64,000 nt of DNA from Rebecca billardiae RCC1528. Lineage: Eukaryota; Protista; Haptophyta. Location: assembly GCA_965240325.2 (NCBI GenBank), contig OZ251222.1, positions 2,418,001 to 2,482,000 of the forward strand, in the 5' to 3' direction. Each line of letters starts with the position of its first letter. The first letter of the stretch is position 1. The position numbers and the translations under genes are program-made. The notes beneath the pieces were generated by a model. That model was not told where the DNA came from and did not search any database. It worked only from the letters and a program-made list of their open reading frames with translations. Of this stretch, positions 28,412 to 36,942 are shown in pieces.

Positions 28412-28508
28412 CAGACCGATGACGAGTTGAAGCTAGTCGACTCTCTTACTTCCTGCCATTGACAGACCGATGACGAGTTGAAGCTAGTCGACTCTCTTAC
28501 TTCCTGCC
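28412..28508. repeat. 46 bp local duplication (period 51) of the neighbouring gene's stop-codon region
   Basis: CAGACCGATGACGAGTTGAAGCTAGTCGACTCTCTTACTTCCTGCC at 28412 and 28463. Confidence 0.92.
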
Positions 28509-29542
28509 GCGCCCGTTGGCACGGCGTGACAGTCGACTCGGCCGTGCCACAGCCCGCATGCACGGCCAAACGCGCTCGCCGCCATGCACGAGGTGGCGAG
28601 CAGGAGGACTTTCAGGTTTGGCGGGATGGCCGCCGCGCCCAGGGGCCGGAGGAGGGCGTTGGCAAGCATGTACGTGTGCTCGATGGCTGGGACGGCGAAC
28701 AGGAGGCAGTCTCGCGGCACGCGCCCTCGGCTGGGTAGAGCCGGGCCGGCGAATAGCACCGAGACGAGCGCAGCGACCATGGTCGCCGGCACCGCGGCCG
28801 CAAACTTGCAGCTGAGCACAGCGCGCATGGCGCGCACGGGCGGGTCGCACAGAAGCGCCGCCATGGGCCCGACGGCGGTGGCGAGCACGGGCCAGCGAAA
28901 CGCCGTGGTCAGCCCCATACCCGCGATCCCCACGGCAAACGCCGCGTGGAAGTACGGCGCCATCACCGGCACGCCGAACACGCGCTCCTCGAGCGCGTCG
29001 AGCGCGTGCGGTGCGACGACCAGCCCGCGCGTGTCGGCGGCGGGTTCGCCGATCTGCCAGAGCGTGGAGCCTTCCTTCACCAAGCCGTCGGGACGTGGCC
29101 AGAGCCACCAGCCCATCAGAGGGCCCTGCAGCTCGTACGGGCCGCACATGAAGAAGCTCAGAGCGCCGGCAAACGCAACGATGGTGGGCGAGGCGTCATT
29201 GTGTGCCAGGCGCCGGGCGCACGTGACGGTCGTGTATATCCACGGCGCGTACATGAGTACGGACGAAACGGATGAGCACTCGGAGAAGTTGAGCGCTCCA
29301 CTCGCGTGGCAGTGCGTGCCCCCGAGGTGGACGCTTGCATACTCGACAGCAAAGCCGACGGCGAACGCGGCGATGAGCAGCTTGAGCGCGCCGGTGCGAT
29401 CGCGCGCGCGCAGCGCGTGGGCCAGCGCGAGGGCGAACTGGAAGCTGAAGAGAAGGTCGAGCTCGTAGATGGTGCCGTGGCCGCCGACGGGCGGAAAAAC
29501 ACGAATCACCTCCAGGGGTGTGCTCGACGACCACGGCGACAT
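28484..29542 (-). CDS. Multi-pass membrane protein, uncharacterised (weakly CruF-like N-terminal motif)
   Basis: 352 aa with several hydrophobic helices; motifs GFAVEYASVHLGGTHCH and PYELQGPLMGWWLW. Confidence 0.75.
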   Translation of the reverse strand: MSPWSSSTPLEVIRVFPPVGGHGTIYELDLLFSFQFALALAHALRARDRTGALKLLIAAFAVGFAVEYASVHLGGTHCHASGALNFSECSSVSSVLMYAPWIYTTVTCARRLAHNDASPTIVAFAGALSFFMCGPYELQGPLMGWWLWPRPDGLVKEGSTLWQIGEPAADTRGLVVAPHALDALEERVFGVPVMAPYFHAAFAVGIAGMGLTTAFRWPVLATAVGPMAALLCDPPVRAMRAVLSCKFAAAVPATMVAALVSVLFAGPALPSRGRVPRDCLLFAVPAIEHTYMLANALLRPLGAAAIPPNLKVLLLATSCMAASAFGRACGLWHGRVDCHAVPTGAAGSKRVD

Positions 29543-29797
29543 TCTGAATCCGCGGGTGGCCGGGATCAGCAATGGAGTTCGGCACCGTCGCTGGCTGGAG
29601 GACTGGCGGATCTGCACCGGCTCTGGGCCGCTGCTTCATGTCTTCACGGCATTCCCGCTTGGTGGACACGAAGATGCAACGATGGCGGCGCACCCCGCGG
29701 GACATCACTGAACTTAGGTTTGCTTCAAGCCGAACTGGCCAGGGCGTCGAGCCCACGCCCCACGGGTTGGCGTCAGTGTTGTCGAGGCGCGAATGCC

Positions 29798-30211
29798 TCA
29801 CGACATCGGGAGTGGCGGAGCGGACGTCACCGCTTGGTAGCCCACAGCTGCGACGAGCGCCAGCGTCGCAAAGACCGCTGCAAACAGGAGACGGGCCGTG
29901 ATGATGGCGCCCTTGCCAAGCACACGGCGCGTGTCTGACGAAGGTTCGTCCGTGTCACGGATGCGGACGGCGTCTCTCGTCGTGCCGAACGGCTCATCCA
30001 CCGCGATACGCCGCCAAAACTCGAAGGAGGCCCACACGAACGGGATCATACCCAGCACAAAGATGGCCGTGTCGACGGCCGTGATGCCGCGCGGCTCCAT
30101 CGCGGCCGCCGGGTCGAGCGCGAGGATGCTCGCGCGCGCCGAGGCGATTGAGGTCAGGCGCATGCGCGGCGCCAGCAAAGCGGCTGCACCCGGGCGCACA
30201 AGGGCGCGCAT
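29798..30211 (-). CDS. Small two-TM protein, probably plastid-targeted
   Basis: Transit-like N-terminus, two hydrophobic helices, conserved-looking PFVWASFEFWRRIA..PFGT motif. Confidence 0.7.
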   Translation of the reverse strand: MRALVRPGAAALLAPRMRLTSIASARASILALDPAAAMEPRGITAVDTAIFVLGMIPFVWASFEFWRRIAVDEPFGTTRDAVRIRDTDEPSSDTRRVLGKGAIITARLLFAAVFATLALVAAVGYQAVTSAPPLPMS

Positions 30212-30634
30212 GTCTCCCGGTCGTGCCTGGCGTGCACGTCGCGATGGAGGTCGCTCGTGCGGCGCCGACGGGGAAGCTGCGGCCGTTGGCAAAAGCGAAA
30301 TTTCTCGATACCAAAAGCCTCAGTCCGTGAGATGATGGGACGCGATCCTACCAAGATTGTGCGATCTCGCATAATCAAATGCAAACGGCGCGGGCGTTCG
30401 TCGCATGATGAATATGCGGCTCATCGTATGAAGCGTCAACTACCCCTGAGGGTGGGTATTAAATACCCGCCGAAGGCAAGGGTTCTCAGGAATCTTTTGC
30501 CCAATTCGCCCGTCCCGCGTCGAGTTGATGCGGCTTCGCTAGGTGGCACCCTCTCGAAGCTGCCATTCGCCGATTCGCTTGCGATGGTGGCGCCGTCTCG
30601 AAGCATGATTGGACGTGAGGTGCGGCGGCCGGCG

Positions 30635-31847
30635 ATGATGAGGCTGAGCACCGTGGCGGCGGCACTGGTACTTGCCCTACTGGTTCAGCCGTCCTCGCAG
30701 GTCGTCGGCGCGAAGCCGGGCCTCTCCTCCTCGCCGCGGGCAGCGCGGACGCGCCCGCGCGTCGCTCGGCAGGCGACGGCGCTCGCACCAGAGGCGCCCA
30801 CCGCCGAGCGCGCGATGCGCGACGAGATGCTGCGCGACGAGATGCCTACCCGCGTCGCAACGCCGTCGCAGGCGGCACCCAGCTCCGCACCGCGGGGCAG
30901 GCCAGCGCGCTCCACCTCGACGACGGCTGCGGCAAAGAAGGCGGGCAAGGCGGCTTCAAAGGGGGGGCGGTCGCGCTCGCGCTCAGCAGCGTCGAACGGC
31001 GTGTACACGGCAGCGGAGGAGCGCGACCTCGTGCGCGCGGCGCAGTTTTTCGTGGAGAACCAGGCGCGGCGTCGCCTTCTGCAGTGCCGCTGGGGACGCA
31101 CGCCGACGGACTACGAGTGGGCGGCGGCGTCGATCACGTTCAACTATGTCGACTCGGACGGCAACGGCCGCATGGATGCGCAGGAGCTGGTTGCGATGTG
31201 CGGCAAGCACATGGACAGGTTGTGCCCGGAGATCTTCGACGCGTTCGACGAGAACGGCGAGGGCTACCTCGACTTTGAGGCGTACGCCAAGCTCACCGCT
31301 AAGGCCCGCGTCGCGAACCAGCCTGACGCTCCGGCGGCGGGTGGCCGCCGCCGCGGCAAGGCTCGCTCGCAGGTGCGCGCGCGCGCGCGCGCGCGCGCAA
31401 CAGGCGCCGTGCGTCGGGCCGGGCTCTGCCGAGGCTGACCGCATGCGCGCGTCCCTCCCCACCCTTTCGCGCGCGCAGCTCGAGCGCGACGAGATGGCGC
31501 TCTCCGACGGGCTGTGCACCCTGACAAACGACCTCGCCCAGGGCGACGAGAGCACGCGCGTCGCGGACTTCCACGCGCAGCTCGAGCGCGGCTCGGCCGC
31601 GCTCAAGTTCCTGATCCGCGCCAACCAGGGTATGGTGCACCAGATCGTTCGGCAGCTGAAGCCGAAGAGCTCGCGGTACGACATCGACGACATGCTGCAG
31701 GACGGCAACATGGGCCTGATGCAGGCCATCGTCCGCTTCGACCCTGCGTCGGGCTGCCGGCTCTCGACGTACGCCTTCCAGTGGATCCGCGGGCTGGTGA
31801 TGACGGGCCTGCACCGGTGCGCGCCGCCGCGGCGCGCGCGCGCGCGC

Positions 31848-31887
<40 letters not shown>

Positions 31888-32466
31888 GCGCGCCCCCGCT
31901 GACCCGTCCCCGCCGCGCCGCGCACCCCACCCGCCGCGCGCAGCCGGCTCAACCAAGTCAACCTGCCGCAGGTTGTCGCGCAGGACGTGTTCAAGCTCAA
32001 GAAGCTGCTGCGCGAGTCGTCGCGCACGTTTGTGACCGTCGCCGACGACGAGCTGCTCTCGTTCGCCAAGCAGCTGAACTGGAACGAGGACCGGCTGCAG
32101 AAGACGGTACGCGCGTCGCGCGTGGACACGACGCACGTCACGTCGCTCCAGTCCGTCGTCTCGCACCGCGACGGCGCGGACTTCACGCTGGGGGACACGG
32201 TCACGTCGCCGACCTCGCCGGTGACGGTCGACTTCCGCATGACGCTCGAGGCGGCACTCGCCTCGCGCGCCGAGCGCAACGCGCACATCATCCGGCTGCG
32301 CTTCGGGCTGGAGGATGGCGTGGAGCACACGTACACCCAGATCGCCGAGAAGGTCGGTCTGAGCCCGCAGCGCGTGTGCAACGTGGTCAACCAGGAGCTG
32401 CGCTTCCTCAAGGATGCGCGCGCGCTCCGCGCCTTTGAGGACGGCCTCGAGTACTCGCACCAGTGA
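30635..32466 (+). CDS. Nuclear-encoded plastid sigma-70 factor with inserted EF-hand pair (exons 30635-31372, 31479-31816, 31944-32466)
   Basis: Signal plus transit peptide; region 1.2 YTAAEERDL; GRTPTDYEWAAA; region 2 LIRANQGMV..DMLQDGNMGLMQAIVRFDP..RLSTYAFQWIR; region 4 IIRLRFGLEDG..TYTQIAEKVGLSPQRV; EF loops DSDGNGRMDAQE and DENGEGYLDFEA. Both GT-AG introns keep frame. Confidence 0.92.
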
Positions 32467-33688: not shown

Positions 33689-34014
33689 GAAACGCAGGCG
33701 GACTTGATTGCTACAAAATGATTGTCGTACTGGTAAGGCGGGAAGGGTATGAGATTTTCGCTCGAGATTATTGCTCGCACCTGCCATTTCGACTGCAGAG
33801 AGCAACCACACCGCTCATTAAATACAGAAGCCGGAGGACTTGGGTGCAGTGCGGTAATCGTGACTTTACTATTATATTCACTTTGGACTATCATACCAGC
33901 TTACCGGCTGACAATGATGCACTCGGCTCAGGCAATAATAATCACACTGGAGATCCAGCTCTCCAGTTCTTCATCCGCCGGTTCGTCGCGTGGATCCTGG
34001 CCCTGCGCCCCACG

Positions 34015-36748
34015 ATGCGGAGGTTGCGACGACCGCGGCTCAATGCCTCGCCGGTCGCGGCCAAGAATGCGCCCATCGTGCCAGAAGGCGCGGACACTGT
34101 CTCCGCGCCGGCTGACCGCATGCGCTCGGAGAGTGAGGACGACCTCAAGCGCGTGGCGCCGCCGCTGTCGATCATGTGCGTTTTCCTCGACCGCCAGGTG
34201 GAGGAGGACTTTCGTGAGACGGTGCTGCGCCCAGCGATCGTGCGTGGGCTCGTCCTCATCCTCGGCGCAACAGCCGTGTTCTGCTTCAGCATCTGCGTCG
34301 TGACCATCCTCGGTCGGGGCGTCGGCGTCGTGCAGATCGCGCTCCTCGTGCTCAGCGCCGTGTCTGCACTCGTCTCCTGGCTCGTCTGGCACCGGCGCGC
34401 CGCGCTCCCGTGGTCGGTGCGGGTGTACGAGATGATCTGCACCTTGTGGTTCTGCGTGATCAGCGTCTTCGTCTCGAGCATCTCGCGCGTCTCGCGCTTG
34501 CCCGGGAACGCCCGCGAGGGCGCGGACCTACACTCCCCCGACCGGGTGGCGTACATACGCGGCGTCCAGTTCATTCGGCAGGCACTCGTGCTCTTCCTCG
34601 CGCTCGGCCTGGCGCCCGTGCAGCTGCGCCACCTCACGCTGGTCGCGGCGCTCAACTTCGCGGCGCTGCTCATCTTCGAGGCCGTGTGGCCAATGTATGG
34701 CTTCGCGCTGCCCGTCGACTACATGATCTTTGCCTTCATGGGCATCGTGCTCGTCCTGCTGCGGCGCGGGAGCATCCGCACGGAGCGCAGCGAGTTCTGG
34801 CTGATGCGCTCGACGCGCGAGGCGCTGCGCGCGCGCCGCGCGGCGGAGGCGCTCGAGGCCGAGGAGCGGATCCACGCCGCCTCGGCCGAGGCGGCGAAGG
34901 AGGCGCGGAGCCGGCTCATCCGCACGACGATGCACGACCTGCGCACGCCGATGCTCTCCGTGAACAACCTGGCTGTGATGCTGCACGCGCTGCCGGCTGC
35001 GACGCGCTTGGACGCGCAGGTCGTACGCGAGTCGCTCTCGACGCTCGAGCTGTGCTCCAGTCTGATGGAGCGCATCGTCTCGGACATGCTCGACTTTGAG
35101 CGCATCGACCAGGGCCGCATGCTGCTCGTCTACCAGCCGTTCCGGCTGGGCGCGCTGCTCGAGGCGGGCGAGCAGCTGCTCGGGACGCTCGCCGAGCGCA
35201 AGGGCGTGAGGATGGAGCTCGACTGCCCGCCCGAGCTGGCGCGCGTGTGGCTCCGCGGCGACTTCCAGCGGCTGCTGCAGTGCCTGCAGAACGGGCTGTC
35301 CAACGCGGTCAAGTTCTCGGACGGCGGGCGCGTCGTGACGCTGCGTGCGTGGCGAGGTGCGGACGAGGACGTCCTGCGGGCCGATGGAGGCGGCGACGAC
35401 GCGGGCGGCGGTGGCGGCGGTGGCGTCAGCGGCGGCGGCGGTGGGAGTGGCGCCGGCGGCTCGCGCCCGTCCTCCCCTCCGACGCCAGCGCGCACCTCGC
35501 ACGCCTCGCACGTGAGCGGCGGCGCGGCCGAGCCGGGCACGCGCACGGTGATTCACGTCGCTGTCGATGACCAGGGCATCGGCCTCTCGCCGGACGAGCT
35601 GGCGACGCTGCAGCAGGGCTCGCTCTTCGCGCAGGTGGGGCGCGGGCAGCTCCAGGGCAACGGCGGCACGGGCCTGGGCCTCGCGATCACTCGGCAGATC
35701 CTCAAGCTGCACGGCGGCTCGCAGCTCCGGCTCAGCTCGGCCGGGCCGGGCAAGGGCATGCGGTTTGAGATCATCATCTCGTGCGACGAGCTCCTCGCAG
35801 GGCCCGGCGGCTTGCACCCGTCGCAGCGCACGGGCAGCAAGCACTCGCACAACTTCGGCGGCGACTTGGACGTGGGCGCCCGCAGCACTCGGAGCGGCTC
35901 TTACGGCCGCGCCAACAGCGTGCACTTCCGAAGCGGCTCGTCGACGTTGACCAGCCCGCGCGGCAGCGCCATCCCGGACCACTCTGCGCCCAAGCACGAG
36001 GAAGGCGAGGGCGACCCGTCGGCCACTCGGAGCGCCAACGCGCAGCCCGTCTTCCCGCCGGGCTTCCGATGCCTGCACGTGGAGGTAGGCTCGCCTTCCC
36101 GCCGCGGCGCGCTCCCCCGCATGCGAATGCGCGCACTGCACCACGTGCGCCGCTGATGATCTCGCTCCGCCCCGCCTGCGCTGCCGGCGGTGCGCGGCGG
36201 CACCGCGTGTCGCAGGATGACGCCTTCCTCCGCATGACGCTCCCGCCGCGCATCTTCGCGCCACTTGGCGTCGAGTACGACGCGGCCACCGACGGTAGCC
36301 ACGCCCTCGAGCTCGCCGCGAAGACGGATTACGCCGTCGTCCTGATGGATAACCAGGTGCGGGCGCTGGCGAGGTGCCGGCGGCGCGCGTGCATTCACAC
36401 GTGGTGTGTGGCATGCGCTGGCGGGGCTGGTTCTCACAGCCGCCTTGCTTCCTCCGCACCTGCCCGCGCGGCCTCCACGCGGCCCTCCCGCAGATGCCTG
36501 TCATGTCTGGCATCACGGCGACGCGTCGGCTGCGCGAGCTCGGCTTCAGCGGCAGCATCATCGGCATCACCGGCGATCCGATCGGGTCGCCCGAGCGGCG
36601 CGAATTCGAGGCATCGGGCTTGTCGTGCTGCGTGGACAAGGGCAGTGAAGGCGTGGAACGCGTCATCGAGATCATCCTCAGCTACGCCATCGCCATGGAC
36701 GCCGGCGAGGAGCCATCTGACAGCGGTGTCGACGACGACAGAAGATGA
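34015..36748 (+). CDS. Membrane-bound hybrid histidine kinase, HisKA-HATPase-receiver (exons ~34015-36084, 36216-36356, 36494-36748)
   Basis: About six TM helices; H-box TMHDLRTPM, N-box NGLSNAVKF, DQGIG, GGTGLGL; spliced receiver CLHVE|DD..VVLMDNQ|MPVMSG..IIGITG..VDK. Start codon uncertain. Confidence 0.93.
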
Positions 36749-36942
36749 TGTGATGATTACGAGCGCGTGCTCTGCAGTGATTGTCCCGACAGGTACACGT
36801 AGTCGTCTAACAGTCCGGAGTCACTGAGACTGAGTTACAGTGAGTATTGATCGACGGTCTAACACGTACTACAGACAGTGTTCATCACCGTACATCAATG
36901 ACCGCCGCCATAGGACTACTATATTTATTATTGCCGCCTATA

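What the first reader, a model, noticed from the sequence alone, without database searches (positions are those of the whole stretch)
30635..32466. Plastid sigma factor with an EF-hand pair: candidate Ca2+-gated plastid transcription
Seen: within one exon, directly after the cyanobacterial/plastid-type GRTPTDYEWAAA segment between regions 1.2 and 2.1, sit two helix-loop-helix motifs. DSDGNGRMDAQE (31151-31186) has canonical ligands at 1, 3, 5, 9, 12; DENGEGYLDFEA (31247-31282) has Ala at 12 and is probably weaker. Regions 2 and 4 and a bipartite targeting peptide are present. Established: nuclear-encoded sigma factors direct the plastid-encoded RNA polymerase, stromal Ca2+ changes with light/dark and stress, and the 1.2-2.1 interval tolerates inserts. 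Inference: a one-component calcium sensor on the plastid polymerase. I know of no described sigma-EF-hand fusion.
Basis: partly seen in the sequence, partly recalled or inferred. Interest (0 to 1): 0.85.

Follow-up and report, generated by a model that had tools for sequence, protein, structure and literature searches.

The report
Plastid sigma factor carrying EF-hands
A nuclear gene of a haptophyte alga (Pavlovales group) encodes a chloroplast-type RNA polymerase sigma factor with a calmodulin-like calcium-binding module built into it; the fusion is conserved in all seven relatives found and I found no paper describing it, so calcium may act directly on chloroplast transcription, though this is untested.

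Summary
A three-exon gene (30635-31372, 31434-31816, 31944-32466, + strand; GT-AG introns of 61 and 127 nt) encodes a 547-aa sigma-70-type protein.

- **Domains:** Pfam finds EF-hand_1 above its cut-off in exon 1, Sigma70_r2 in exon 2 and Sigma70_r4 (0.1 bit under its cut-off) in exon 3.
- **Position of the EF pair:** it starts right after the plastid/cyanobacterial PTxxEWA motif. That motif lies 145 residues from the region 2.1 core here, against 26-27 in ordinary sigmas.
- **Relatives:** the same architecture and intron positions occur in Diacronema lutheri, Pavlovales sp. CCMP2436 and four environmental or uncharacterised relatives.
- **The two loops:** loop 1 is canonical in 7 of 7 members. 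Loop 2 lacks the acidic residue at position 12 in 7 of 7.
- **Selection and fold:** the EF block is under purifying selection (dN/dS 0.04-0.48) and models as a calmodulin-lobe-like pair.
- **Rarity:** among the best 150 hits of a profile search of 1.84 billion representative proteins, only this family combines both domains. Six literature searches found no description of it.

Calcium gating of transcription remains an inference. No RNA run was listed, so inclusion of the EF block in mRNA rests on conservation and on two public annotated gene models. I rate it a new variant of a known kind, with moderately high interest.

The parts
30635..31372 (+). Exon 1 (246 codons): presequence, region 1.2 remnant, EF-hand pair and the start of the linker. 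In-frame upstream ATGs at 30584 and 30605 are alternative starts.
   Evidence: Open frame and GT donor at 31373. The orthologues have the same exon content.
30635..31039 (+). Putative bipartite plastid presequence (residues 1-135). The hydrophobic stretch is residues 7-17; the rest is rich in S/T/R/K/A and poor in acidic residues.
   Evidence: Hydropathy and composition, with the same pattern in all orthologues. No formal targeting predictor was run.
31004..31129 (+). C-terminal half of region 1.2 plus the plastid/cyanobacterial-type PTxxEWA motif (residues 124-165)
   Evidence: By eye it follows the pattern of a plant-type sigma found in the search, P0020 (...LTAKEE...REPTIVEWAAA), and it carries the PTxxEWA motif. 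Pfam Sigma70_r1_2 was not detected. The equivalent part of the D. lutheri model has pLDDT 88-96.
31130..31306 (+). EF-hand pair (residues 166-224). The canonical loop 1 is at 31151-31186 and the degenerate loop 2 (Ala at position 12) at 31247-31282.
   Evidence: Pfam; loop table for 7 members; AF2 model with pLDDT 78.8 showing helix-loop-helix twice with a beta bridge; all 50 best Foldseek matches listed are EF-hand pair structures, mostly calmodulin, with centrin, troponin C and calcineurin B.
31307..31372 (+). First part of the low-complexity basic linker (end of exon 1)
   Evidence: 35% identity and dN/dS of 0.62 against L001. The equivalent D. lutheri residues have pLDDT below 50.
31373..31433 (+). 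Intron 1 (61 nt, GT-AG, phase 0), containing a (GC)n run
   Evidence: The frame changes between exons and the splice sites fit. An intron sits at the same place in L001, L004 and L005.
31434..31816 (+). Exon 2: rest of the linker and sigma regions 2.1-2.4 (Pfam Sigma70_r2 at about 31611-31799)
   Evidence: Sigma70_r2 at 56.1 bits. TIGR02997 (RNA polymerase sigma factor, RpoD/SigA family) positions 39-137, E 8.9e-15.
31817..31943 (+). Intron 2 (127 nt, GT-AG, phase 2), containing (GCC)n
   Evidence: A contig of a close relative that lacks this intron (L002, 80-86% nucleotide identity) joins 31816 to 31944/31945. The intron position is the same in the orthologues.
31944..32466 (+). Exon 3: sigma regions 3 and 4 and the stop codon (Sigma70_r4 helix-turn-helix at about 32269-32391)
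   Evidence: Sigma70_r4 at 24.0 bits against a cut-off of 24.1. TIGR02997 positions 150-297, E 2.1e-12. The orthologue aligns to Thermus SigA from region 2.1 through 4.2, E 3e-26.

Best explanation
This is a nuclear gene of a pavlovophyte haptophyte for a divergent sigma-70-type factor of cyanobacterial/plastid ancestry. It is most likely imported into the complex plastid to serve the plastid-encoded RNA polymerase. A calmodulin-lobe-like EF-hand pair followed by a basic, disordered linker has been inserted directly after the PTxxEWA helix. That is the position of the sigma non-conserved region between regions 1.2 and 2.1, on the outer face of sigma domain 2. Only the first loop can bind Ca2+ in the canonical way; the second is a conserved non-binding partner. 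Proposed mechanism (inferred): when stromal Ca2+ rises, loop 1 becomes occupied and the EF pair folds or opens. Because its entering helix continues straight from the EWA helix, this shifts the packing of region 1.2 against domain 2, or releases or captures the basic linker. Either effect would change holoenzyme formation or promoter opening at the promoters this factor recognises. Those promoters probably form a special set, because the -10 and -35 contact residues differ from the housekeeping consensus yet are conserved within the family. What is shown: the gene model, both domains, the insertion site, conservation, purifying selection and rarity. What is inferred: plastid location, Ca2+ binding, and any effect on transcription.
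For: - Gene model and motifs.
- Domains: Pfam EF-hand_1 above its cut-off, and Sigma70_r2 and r4. The RpoD/SigA family model TIGR02997 matches both exon 2 and exon 3.
- Orthologues with the same EF block: D. lutheri, Pavlovales sp. CCMP2436, two JGI metagenome contigs and two Logan contigs. The intron positions are the same.
- Loops: loop 1 ligands are kept in 7 of 7 members and loop 2 lacks an acidic residue at position 12 in 7 of 7.
- Selection: against L001, dN/dS of the EF block is 0.33, compared with 0.26 for region 2, 0.33 for regions 3-4 and 0.62 for the linker. It is 0.04-0.48 in the other pairs.
- Insertion: 145 residues separate EWA from the 2.1 core here (127-132 in the spliced orthologues), against 26-27 in 11 ordinary sigmas that carry the motif.
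- Fold: the EF segment models at pLDDT 78.8 and pTM 0.68, and its nearest solved folds are Ca2+-sensor lobes.
- Sigma domains: they model at pLDDT above 85 in the D. lutheri protein and match RNAP-bound sigma factors. The nearest ESM Atlas structure clusters are cyanobacterial SigA and plant or green-algal plastid sigma factors.
- Context from papers: stromal Ca2+ elevations occur in a secondary red plastid under high light and H2O2, and diatom KEA3 has a lineage-specific EF-hand pair needed for its function (PMC11663583).
Against: - No experiment or RNA data bear on the function, and no RNA run was listed.
- In the full-length model the EF region has pLDDT of only 46-51, so its position relative to domain 2 is unknown.
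- Only one of the two loops is canonical, so Ca2+ affinity and cooperativity may be low.
- EF-hand Pfam scores in D. lutheri and CCMP2436 fall below the curated cut-offs.
- The linker on the C-terminal side is long and poorly conserved, which weakens any rigid mechanical coupling.
- The only intron-less, presumably transcript-derived contig found (L002) covers exons 2-3 and ends in what looks like retained intron 1, so it does not show the EF block in mRNA.
- Region 1.2 is not detected by Pfam.
- Targeting was judged only by hydropathy and composition.
Confidence: 0.55

Rival explanations
1. The EF pair is a Ca2+-independent or constitutively metal-loaded structural module. It would act as a lineage-specific filler of the sigma non-conserved region that stabilises domain 2 or contacts the polymerase, without any signalling role.
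For: Loop 2 is degenerate in 7 of 7 members. Pfam scores are marginal in two named orthologues. Other bacteria carry unrelated, non-signalling inserts at this position, for example the E. coli sigma-70 non-conserved region (general knowledge). The 1.2-2.1 interval clearly tolerates length change.
Against: All five side-chain ligand positions of loop 1 (1, 3, 5, 9, 12) are kept across seven taxa, even where synonymous sites are near saturation. That pattern is what selection for metal binding predicts. An EF pair with one working site is a common sensor design (general knowledge).
Confidence: 0.25
2. The EF pair is a Ca2+-dependent docking site for another partner and does not gate the sigma factor directly. 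The partner could be an anti-sigma-like protein, a kinase, a membrane or nucleoid tether, or the protein's own basic linker. Ca2+ would then control where the sigma factor is or how stable it is.
For: The modelled fold is closest to calmodulin, centrin and troponin C lobes, which work by clamping target helices. Every orthologue has a basic stretch in the linker downstream of the EF pair.
Against: No partner is known. Nothing in the window suggests one: the neighbouring ORFs have no Pfam match, and the downstream histidine kinase shows no link to this gene. The linker is poorly conserved (dN/dS 0.62).
Confidence: 0.15
3. This is a gene-model artefact. The EF block would be intronic or untranslated, or would belong to a separate upstream gene, and the mature sigma factor would lack it, for example because transcription starts downstream of the EF block.
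For: No RNA run was listed. The intron-less contig L002 of a close relative begins downstream of the EF block.
Against: The EF block is in frame with, and directly follows, the PTxxEWA sigma motif with no stop codon and no intron in any of the five genomic loci compared at the DNA level. It has the codon bias of the CDS, is under purifying selection, and is included in the D. lutheri and CCMP2436 annotated models. The D. lutheri annotation pipeline used RNA-seq evidence genome-wide (PMC8379373). The first 205 nt of L002 look like a retained pyrimidine-rich intron ending in CAG rather than a 5' UTR.
Confidence: 0.04

Closest known systems
Nuclear-encoded plastid sigma factors of plants and algae (SIG1-SIG6 type) and cyanobacterial group 1/2 sigma factors
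   Same: Sigma-70 regions 2, 3 and 4 are present, along with the PTxxEWA motif ahead of region 2.1 and an N-terminal presequence. The nearest structure clusters are cyanobacterial SigA and plant or green-algal plastid sigma factors.
   Different: About 119 extra residues (EF-hand pair plus linker) lie between EWA and region 2.1, where these relatives have a fixed 26-27 residues. The first half of region 1.2 is not recognisable. Residues that contact the -10 and -35 elements in E. coli sigma-70 are replaced...STYAFQWIRGL... for STYATWWIRQA, and ...SPQRVCNVVN... for TRERIRQIE (residue roles are from general knowledge).
CRSH, the Ca2+-activated RelA/SpoT homologue of plant chloroplasts
   Same: It also fuses EF-hands to a regulator of plastid gene expression, and it is the known route from Ca2+ to the plastid polymerase through ppGpp (PMC6881373).
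   Different: CRSH is an enzyme with C-terminal EF-hands that acts indirectly through a nucleotide. Here the EF pair is inside the initiation factor itself and there is no RelA/SpoT domain. Most red-lineage RSH4 proteins lack EF-hands.
The non-conserved region of E. coli sigma-70 (between regions 1.2 and 2.1)
   Same: The insertion site in the sigma scaffold is the same, and a lineage-specific insert is tolerated there (general knowledge; position shown).
   Different: The fold is unrelated, there is no metal-binding motif, and it is bacterial rather than plastid-targeted.
Other EF-hand fusions to plastid proteins (diatom KEA3, Chlamydomonas calredoxin)
   Same: These are lineage-specific gains of EF-hands by plastid effectors, and the diatom KEA3 EF-hands are functionally required (PMC11663583; PMC4911631, listed).
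   Different: Their effector domains are a K+/H+ antiporter and a thioredoxin, not a transcription factor.

Membership tests
Sigma-70 family (plastid/cyanobacterial type) | Region 2 (core binding and -10 recognition) detectable by the curated model | tested here: met
   PF04542 scores 56.1 bits against a cut-off of 24 on exon 2, and 53-55 bits in the orthologues.
Sigma-70 family (plastid/cyanobacterial type) | Region 4 helix-turn-helix | tested here: inconclusive
   PF04545 scores 24.0 bits against a cut-off of 24.1 in the window and 24.4 in CCMP2436. However, exon 3 aligns to TIGR02997 positions 150-297 (E 2.1e-12), and the orthologue aligns to Thermus SigA through region 4.2.
Sigma-70 family (plastid/cyanobacterial type) | Region 3 | tested here: inconclusive
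   The only PF04539 match (E 0.049, 14.2 bits) lies over the region 4 helix-turn-helix, not region 3. Region 3 is covered only by the continuous alignments to SigA and RpoD_Cterm and by helices modelled at pLDDT above 80.
Sigma-70 family (plastid/cyanobacterial type) | Region 1.2 | tested here: inconclusive
   PF00140 was not reported. Only the second half (TAxEE...L...Q) and the PTxxEWA motif are recognisable. That part is modelled with pLDDT 88-96.
Sigma-70 family (plastid/cyanobacterial type) | Plastid import, binding to the plastid-encoded polymerase core, and promoter-specific initiation | not testable with these tools
   Only presequence-like hydropathy and composition could be shown.
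EF-hand Ca2+-binding domain pair | A 12-residue loop with oxygen ligands at positions 1, 3, 5, 9 and Glu at 12, and Gly at 6 | tested here: met
   Loop 1 (DSDGNGRMDAQE) fits PS00018. The ligand positions are kept in 7 of 7 members.
EF-hand Ca2+-binding domain pair | Curated model above its cut-off | tested here: met
   EF-hand_1 scores 34.0 against 25.4 and EF-hand_6 scores 31.6 against 25. The pair model EF-hand_7 scores 25.6 against 30 and is not met. The D. lutheri and CCMP2436 orthologues fall below the cut-offs.
EF-hand Ca2+-binding domain pair | A second, paired loop that is also canonical | tested here: not met
   Position 12 of loop 2 is Ala or Gly in 7 of 7 members, so this is a pair with a single canonical site.
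EF-hand Ca2+-binding domain pair | Four-helix paired fold with a short beta bridge between the loops | tested here: met
   The AF2 model has helices 6-19, 29-39, 44-51 and 61-74 and strands 26-28 and 58-60, with pLDDT 78.8. All 50 best Foldseek matches listed are EF-hand pair structures, with TM 0.54-0.74 normalised to the query.
EF-hand Ca2+-binding domain pair | Ca2+ binding | not testable with these tools
   This needs ITC, a 45Ca overlay or spectroscopy.
CRSH / RSH4 (Ca2+-activated ppGpp synthetase) | RelA/SpoT synthetase domain | tested here: not met
   No such domain appears in any exon. The resemblance is functional only.

The most novel reading that the evidence does not exclude
This is a one-component Ca2+-gated sigma factor. 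Ca2+ binding to the single canonical EF loop, embedded in the non-conserved-region position, would directly switch holoenzyme formation or promoter opening by the plastid-encoded polymerase at a dedicated regulon. Stromal Ca2+ signals (light/dark, high light, H2O2) would then be read out as plastid transcription with no intermediary kinase or alarmone.
Probability: 0.35. Interest if true: 0.85.

Novelty: new variant of a known kind. Interest (0 to 1): 0.66.

Why it matters
Few Ca2+ decoders are known inside chloroplasts. One listed paper notes that classical EF-hand proteins appear mostly absent from plastids (PMC4844381, abstract). The only established link from Ca2+ to the plastid polymerase runs indirectly through CRSH and ppGpp, and most red-lineage RSH4 enzymes lack EF-hands.

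I found no report, for bacteria or for organelles, of a sigma factor that itself carries a conserved Ca2+-binding module. If it works as proposed, it gives a directly testable, minimal system for second-messenger control of transcription initiation: one protein, one metal site, and a natural tryptophan probe next to the loop. It would also suggest how secondary-plastid algae couple stromal Ca2+ transients to plastid gene expression.

Even if the module proves purely structural, it shows that the 1.2-2.1 junction of plastid sigma factors can accept a folded foreign domain.

Tried and rejected
- **Metagenome scan.** A scan with the junction peptides (ASITFNYV, AQFF[VI]E[NQ]) gave 355 pattern matches, but none was confirmed.
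- **Word-index search.** The first protein search with the window's EF region returned only one relative and missed orthologues found later. That index is leaky, so its blanks were not used as evidence of absence.
- **Full-length fold.** The AF2 model of the D. lutheri orthologue gave the EF region pLDDT of only 46-51. I drew no conclusion about where the EF pair docks on domain 2 or on the polymerase.
- **L002 as an EF-less isoform.** I considered reading the 5' end of L002 this way. I set it aside because its first 205 nt look like a retained pyrimidine-rich intron ending in CAG, and the contig simply ends there. An EF-less isoform cannot be excluded.
- **Independent fusions.** I checked the other high-scoring hits for separate sigma/EF fusions (P0014, P0015, P0017, P0018) and scanned all 152 retrieved proteins with a regex. 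None combines both domains.
- **Cluster look-up.** It gave no names or accessions that would identify the uncharacterised relatives.
- **CRSH membership.** Rejected, because there is no RelA/SpoT domain.
Full report
**Observation**

The window is GC-rich eukaryotic DNA, 52-76% GC in 2-kb windows. On the + strand between 30635 and 32466, three reading frames join through two GT-AG introns (31373-31433, 61 nt; 31817-31943, 127 nt) into a 1644-nt CDS of 547 codons.

- GRTPTDYEWAAA at 31094-31129
- DSDGNGRMDAQE at 31151-31186
- DENGEGYLDFEA at 31247-31282

Pfam results:
- EF-hand_1: 34.0 bits (cut-off 25.4)
- EF-hand_6: 31.6 bits (cut-off 25)
- EF-hand_7 (the pair model): 25.6 bits, below its cut-off of 30
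- Sigma70_r2 in exon 2: 56.1 bits
- Sigma70_r4 in exon 3: 24.0 bits, against a cut-off of 24.1

NCBIfam aligns exons 2 and 3 to consecutive parts (positions 39-137 and 150-297) of the RpoD/SigA family model TIGR02997.

**Is the gene model right, and is the EF block coding?**

No RNA run was listed for this stretch, so I used comparative evidence. Searches found six other members that carry the EF block, plus two fragments that cover only the sigma part:
- P0002: Diacronema lutheri KFE25_001859, 495 aa
- P0003: Pavlovales sp. CCMP2436 T492DRAFT_1024080, 515 aa
- P0001 (on L001) and P0004: JGI metagenome contigs
- P0007 (on L003) and P0153: Logan genomic contigs
- P0006 (on L002) and P0008: fragments covering the sigma part only

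Four lines of evidence support the model.
- **Gene structure.** In L001, L003, L004 (D. lutheri) and L005 (CCMP2436) the EF block lies in the first exon. It directly follows the PTxxEWA motif, and the two introns occupy the same positions as in the window.
- **Intron 2.** L002 is a 1240-nt contig from JGI sample 3300016936, 80-86% identical to the window, and it lacks intron 2. It joins 31816 to 31944/31945, which confirms that splice. Its 5' end stops in what looks like retained intron 1, so it does not cover the EF block.
- **Codon bias.** In the EF block, GC3 is 0.91 in the reading frame and 0.42-0.60 in the other frames. The whole CDS also has GC3 of 0.91.
- **Selection.** Against L001, dN/dS is 0.33 for the EF pair, 0.26 for region 2, 0.33 for regions 3-4 and 0.62 for the linker. 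Across all pairs with unsaturated dS, the EF block gives 0.04-0.48.

The D. lutheri models were built with BRAKER2 using RNA-seq evidence genome-wide (PMC8379373). That is not evidence specific to this gene. I conclude that the EF block is coding and constrained. Alternative EF-less transcripts cannot be excluded.

**Anatomy**

*Presequence (residues 1-135).* An 11-residue hydrophobic stretch is followed by a region rich in S, T, R, K and A and poor in acidic residues. Every orthologue shows the same pattern. This fits the bipartite presequence of complex red plastids, but no targeting predictor was available.

*Region 1.2 remnant (residues 124-165).* These residues resemble the second half of region 1.2 plus the motif REPTxxEWAAA of a plant-type sigma retrieved in the search (P0020). 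Pfam's region 1.2 model does not fire.

*The insertion.* In 11 retrieved sigmas that carry P[ST]xxEWA, the distance to the region 2.1 core ([AS]N[LQ][RG][LMF]V) is 26-27 residues. It is 145 in the window and 127-132 in the two spliced orthologues. The insert therefore sits where E. coli sigma-70 carries its non-conserved region (position from general knowledge). It consists of the EF pair (residues 166-224) and a poorly conserved, basic linker with low predicted confidence.

*The two loops.*
- Loop 1 keeps D, D/S, N, D/E and E at positions 1, 3, 5, 9 and 12, and Gly at 6, in all seven members.
- Loop 2 has Ala or Gly at position 12 in all seven. One member has Val at position 5, and one has Asn at position 1.
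- The module is therefore a pair with a single canonical site and a conserved non-canonical partner.

*Fold.* Modelled alone, using the family members plus generic EF-hand pairs as the alignment, the segment folds as helix-loop-helix twice with the inter-loop beta bridge (pLDDT 78.8, pTM 0.68). All 50 best Foldseek matches listed in the PDB are EF-hand pair structures, mostly calmodulin, with centrin, troponin C and calcineurin B. TM normalised to the query is 0.54-0.74 and E is about 2e-3, which is weak because the domain is short.

*The sigma part.* The D. lutheri orthologue aligns from region 2.1 through 4.2 with Thermus SigA (E 3e-26). Its sigma domains model at pLDDT above 85 and match RNAP-bound sigma factors. 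ESM Atlas structure neighbours are cyanobacterial SigA and plant or green-algal plastid sigma clusters.

*Promoter-contact residues.* Several residues that contact promoter DNA in E. coli sigma-70 are replaced, and the replacements are conserved within the family. Region 2.3/2.4 reads STY[AS][FY]QWIRGL and region 4.2 reads SPQRVC[NS]VVN. The roles of these positions come from general knowledge. I read this as a specialised rather than a housekeeping promoter preference; that is an inference.

**Distribution and novelty**

A profile covering the region 1.2 remnant, the EF pair and region 2 was run with HMMER over 1.84 billion representative proteins. It gave 33,316 hits at E ≤ 0.001. Only the family members scored above E 1e-40. 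Everything below them was either a plain sigma factor or a plain EF-hand repeat protein.

Only the best 150 hits are visible. An independent fusion would have ranked near the top, because its scores for both parts would add, but this is not an exhaustive census of domain architectures.

The two named members are both Pavlovophyceae. The window's protein is 65-68% identical to them in region 2. The window therefore most likely comes from another pavlovophyte.

Six full-text searches found no paper describing a sigma factor with an EF-hand. The known Ca2+ link to plastid transcription is CRSH and ppGpp. In the two named orthologues the EF-hand Pfam scores fall just below the curated cut-offs, which may explain why the architecture went unnoticed.

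Stromal Ca2+ elevations under high light and H2O2 have been imaged in a diatom. Diatom KEA3 carries a lineage-specific EF-hand pair that is needed for its function (PMC11663583). Ca2+ signals in secondary red plastids, and EF-hand gain by their proteins, therefore both have precedent.

**Mechanism (inferred)**

I favour a model with these steps:
1. Ca2+ occupancy of loop 1 folds or opens the EF pair.
2. The entering helix of the EF pair continues directly from the EWA helix, which packs with domain 2.
3. This alters sigma activity in one of two ways: by changing the geometry between region 1.2 and domain 2 near the discriminator and -10 DNA, or by Ca2+-dependent capture or release of the basic linker.

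My estimates are about 0.9 that the architecture is real, about 0.65 that loop 1 binds Ca2+, and about 0.35-0.4 that Ca2+ directly gates transcription.

The rivals are a Ca2+-independent structural insert (0.25), a Ca2+-dependent docking site for a partner or tether (0.15), and a gene-model artefact or EF-less mature protein (0.04).

**Verdict**

This is a new variant of a known kind: a plastid sigma factor with an embedded EF-hand pair. It is conserved in all seven members found (the two named ones are Pavlovales), absent from the literature searched, and directly testable.

Noticed in passing
window 33718-36156 (+): A long ORF with HisKA (37.1 bits) and HATPase_c (52.8 bits) domains and several hydrophobic segments lies about 1.3 kb downstream of the sigma gene. 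An ORF in another frame (35781-36827) contains a receiver-like DYAVVLMDNQ stretch, so this may be a hybrid histidine kinase split by an intron. No link to the sigma gene was found.
   Followed up: partly
window 31375-31398 and 31850-31885: Both introns of the sigma gene consist largely of GC-rich simple repeats: (GC)n in intron 1, and (GCC)n followed by a proline-codon-like run in intron 2. Intron 1 of the L001 orthologue is 219 nt and in frame, so prokaryotic gene callers read straight through it.
   Followed up: partly
L002 1-205: The intron-less contig of a close relative has intron 2 removed, but it starts with about 205 nt that do not match exon 1 and end in a pyrimidine-rich ...CCCTGCAG acceptor. 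This could be a retained intron 1, or possibly a transcript that starts downstream of the EF block.
   Followed up: partly
P0002 (D. lutheri) and P0003 (CCMP2436): In the two named orthologues every EF-hand Pfam model scores below its gathering threshold (24.9 against 25.4, and 20.7 against 25), although loop 1 fits PROSITE PS00018. Threshold-based annotation would therefore miss the fusion.
   Followed up: yes
window 28484-29617 (-) and 29798-30292 (-): Two ORFs upstream on the opposite strand (377 and 164 aa), both hydrophobic and membrane-protein-like, have no Pfam match at E ≤ 0.01.
   Followed up: partly
same genome, other pieces (scan notes s1-352992, s1-343825, s1-346319): First-stage notes report other EF-hand fusions to apparently plastid-targeted proteins in this genome (PTOX, TerC and a TRP channel). 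If they are real, EF-hand gain by plastid proteins may be a trend in this lineage. None was checked here.
   Followed up: no
P0011, P0013, P0016 (representative-search hits): Several bacterial sigma factors in the representative library contain an exact internal duplication of regions 1.2-2.4. These look like assembly or gene-call chimeras rather than real tandem sigma factors.
   Followed up: no
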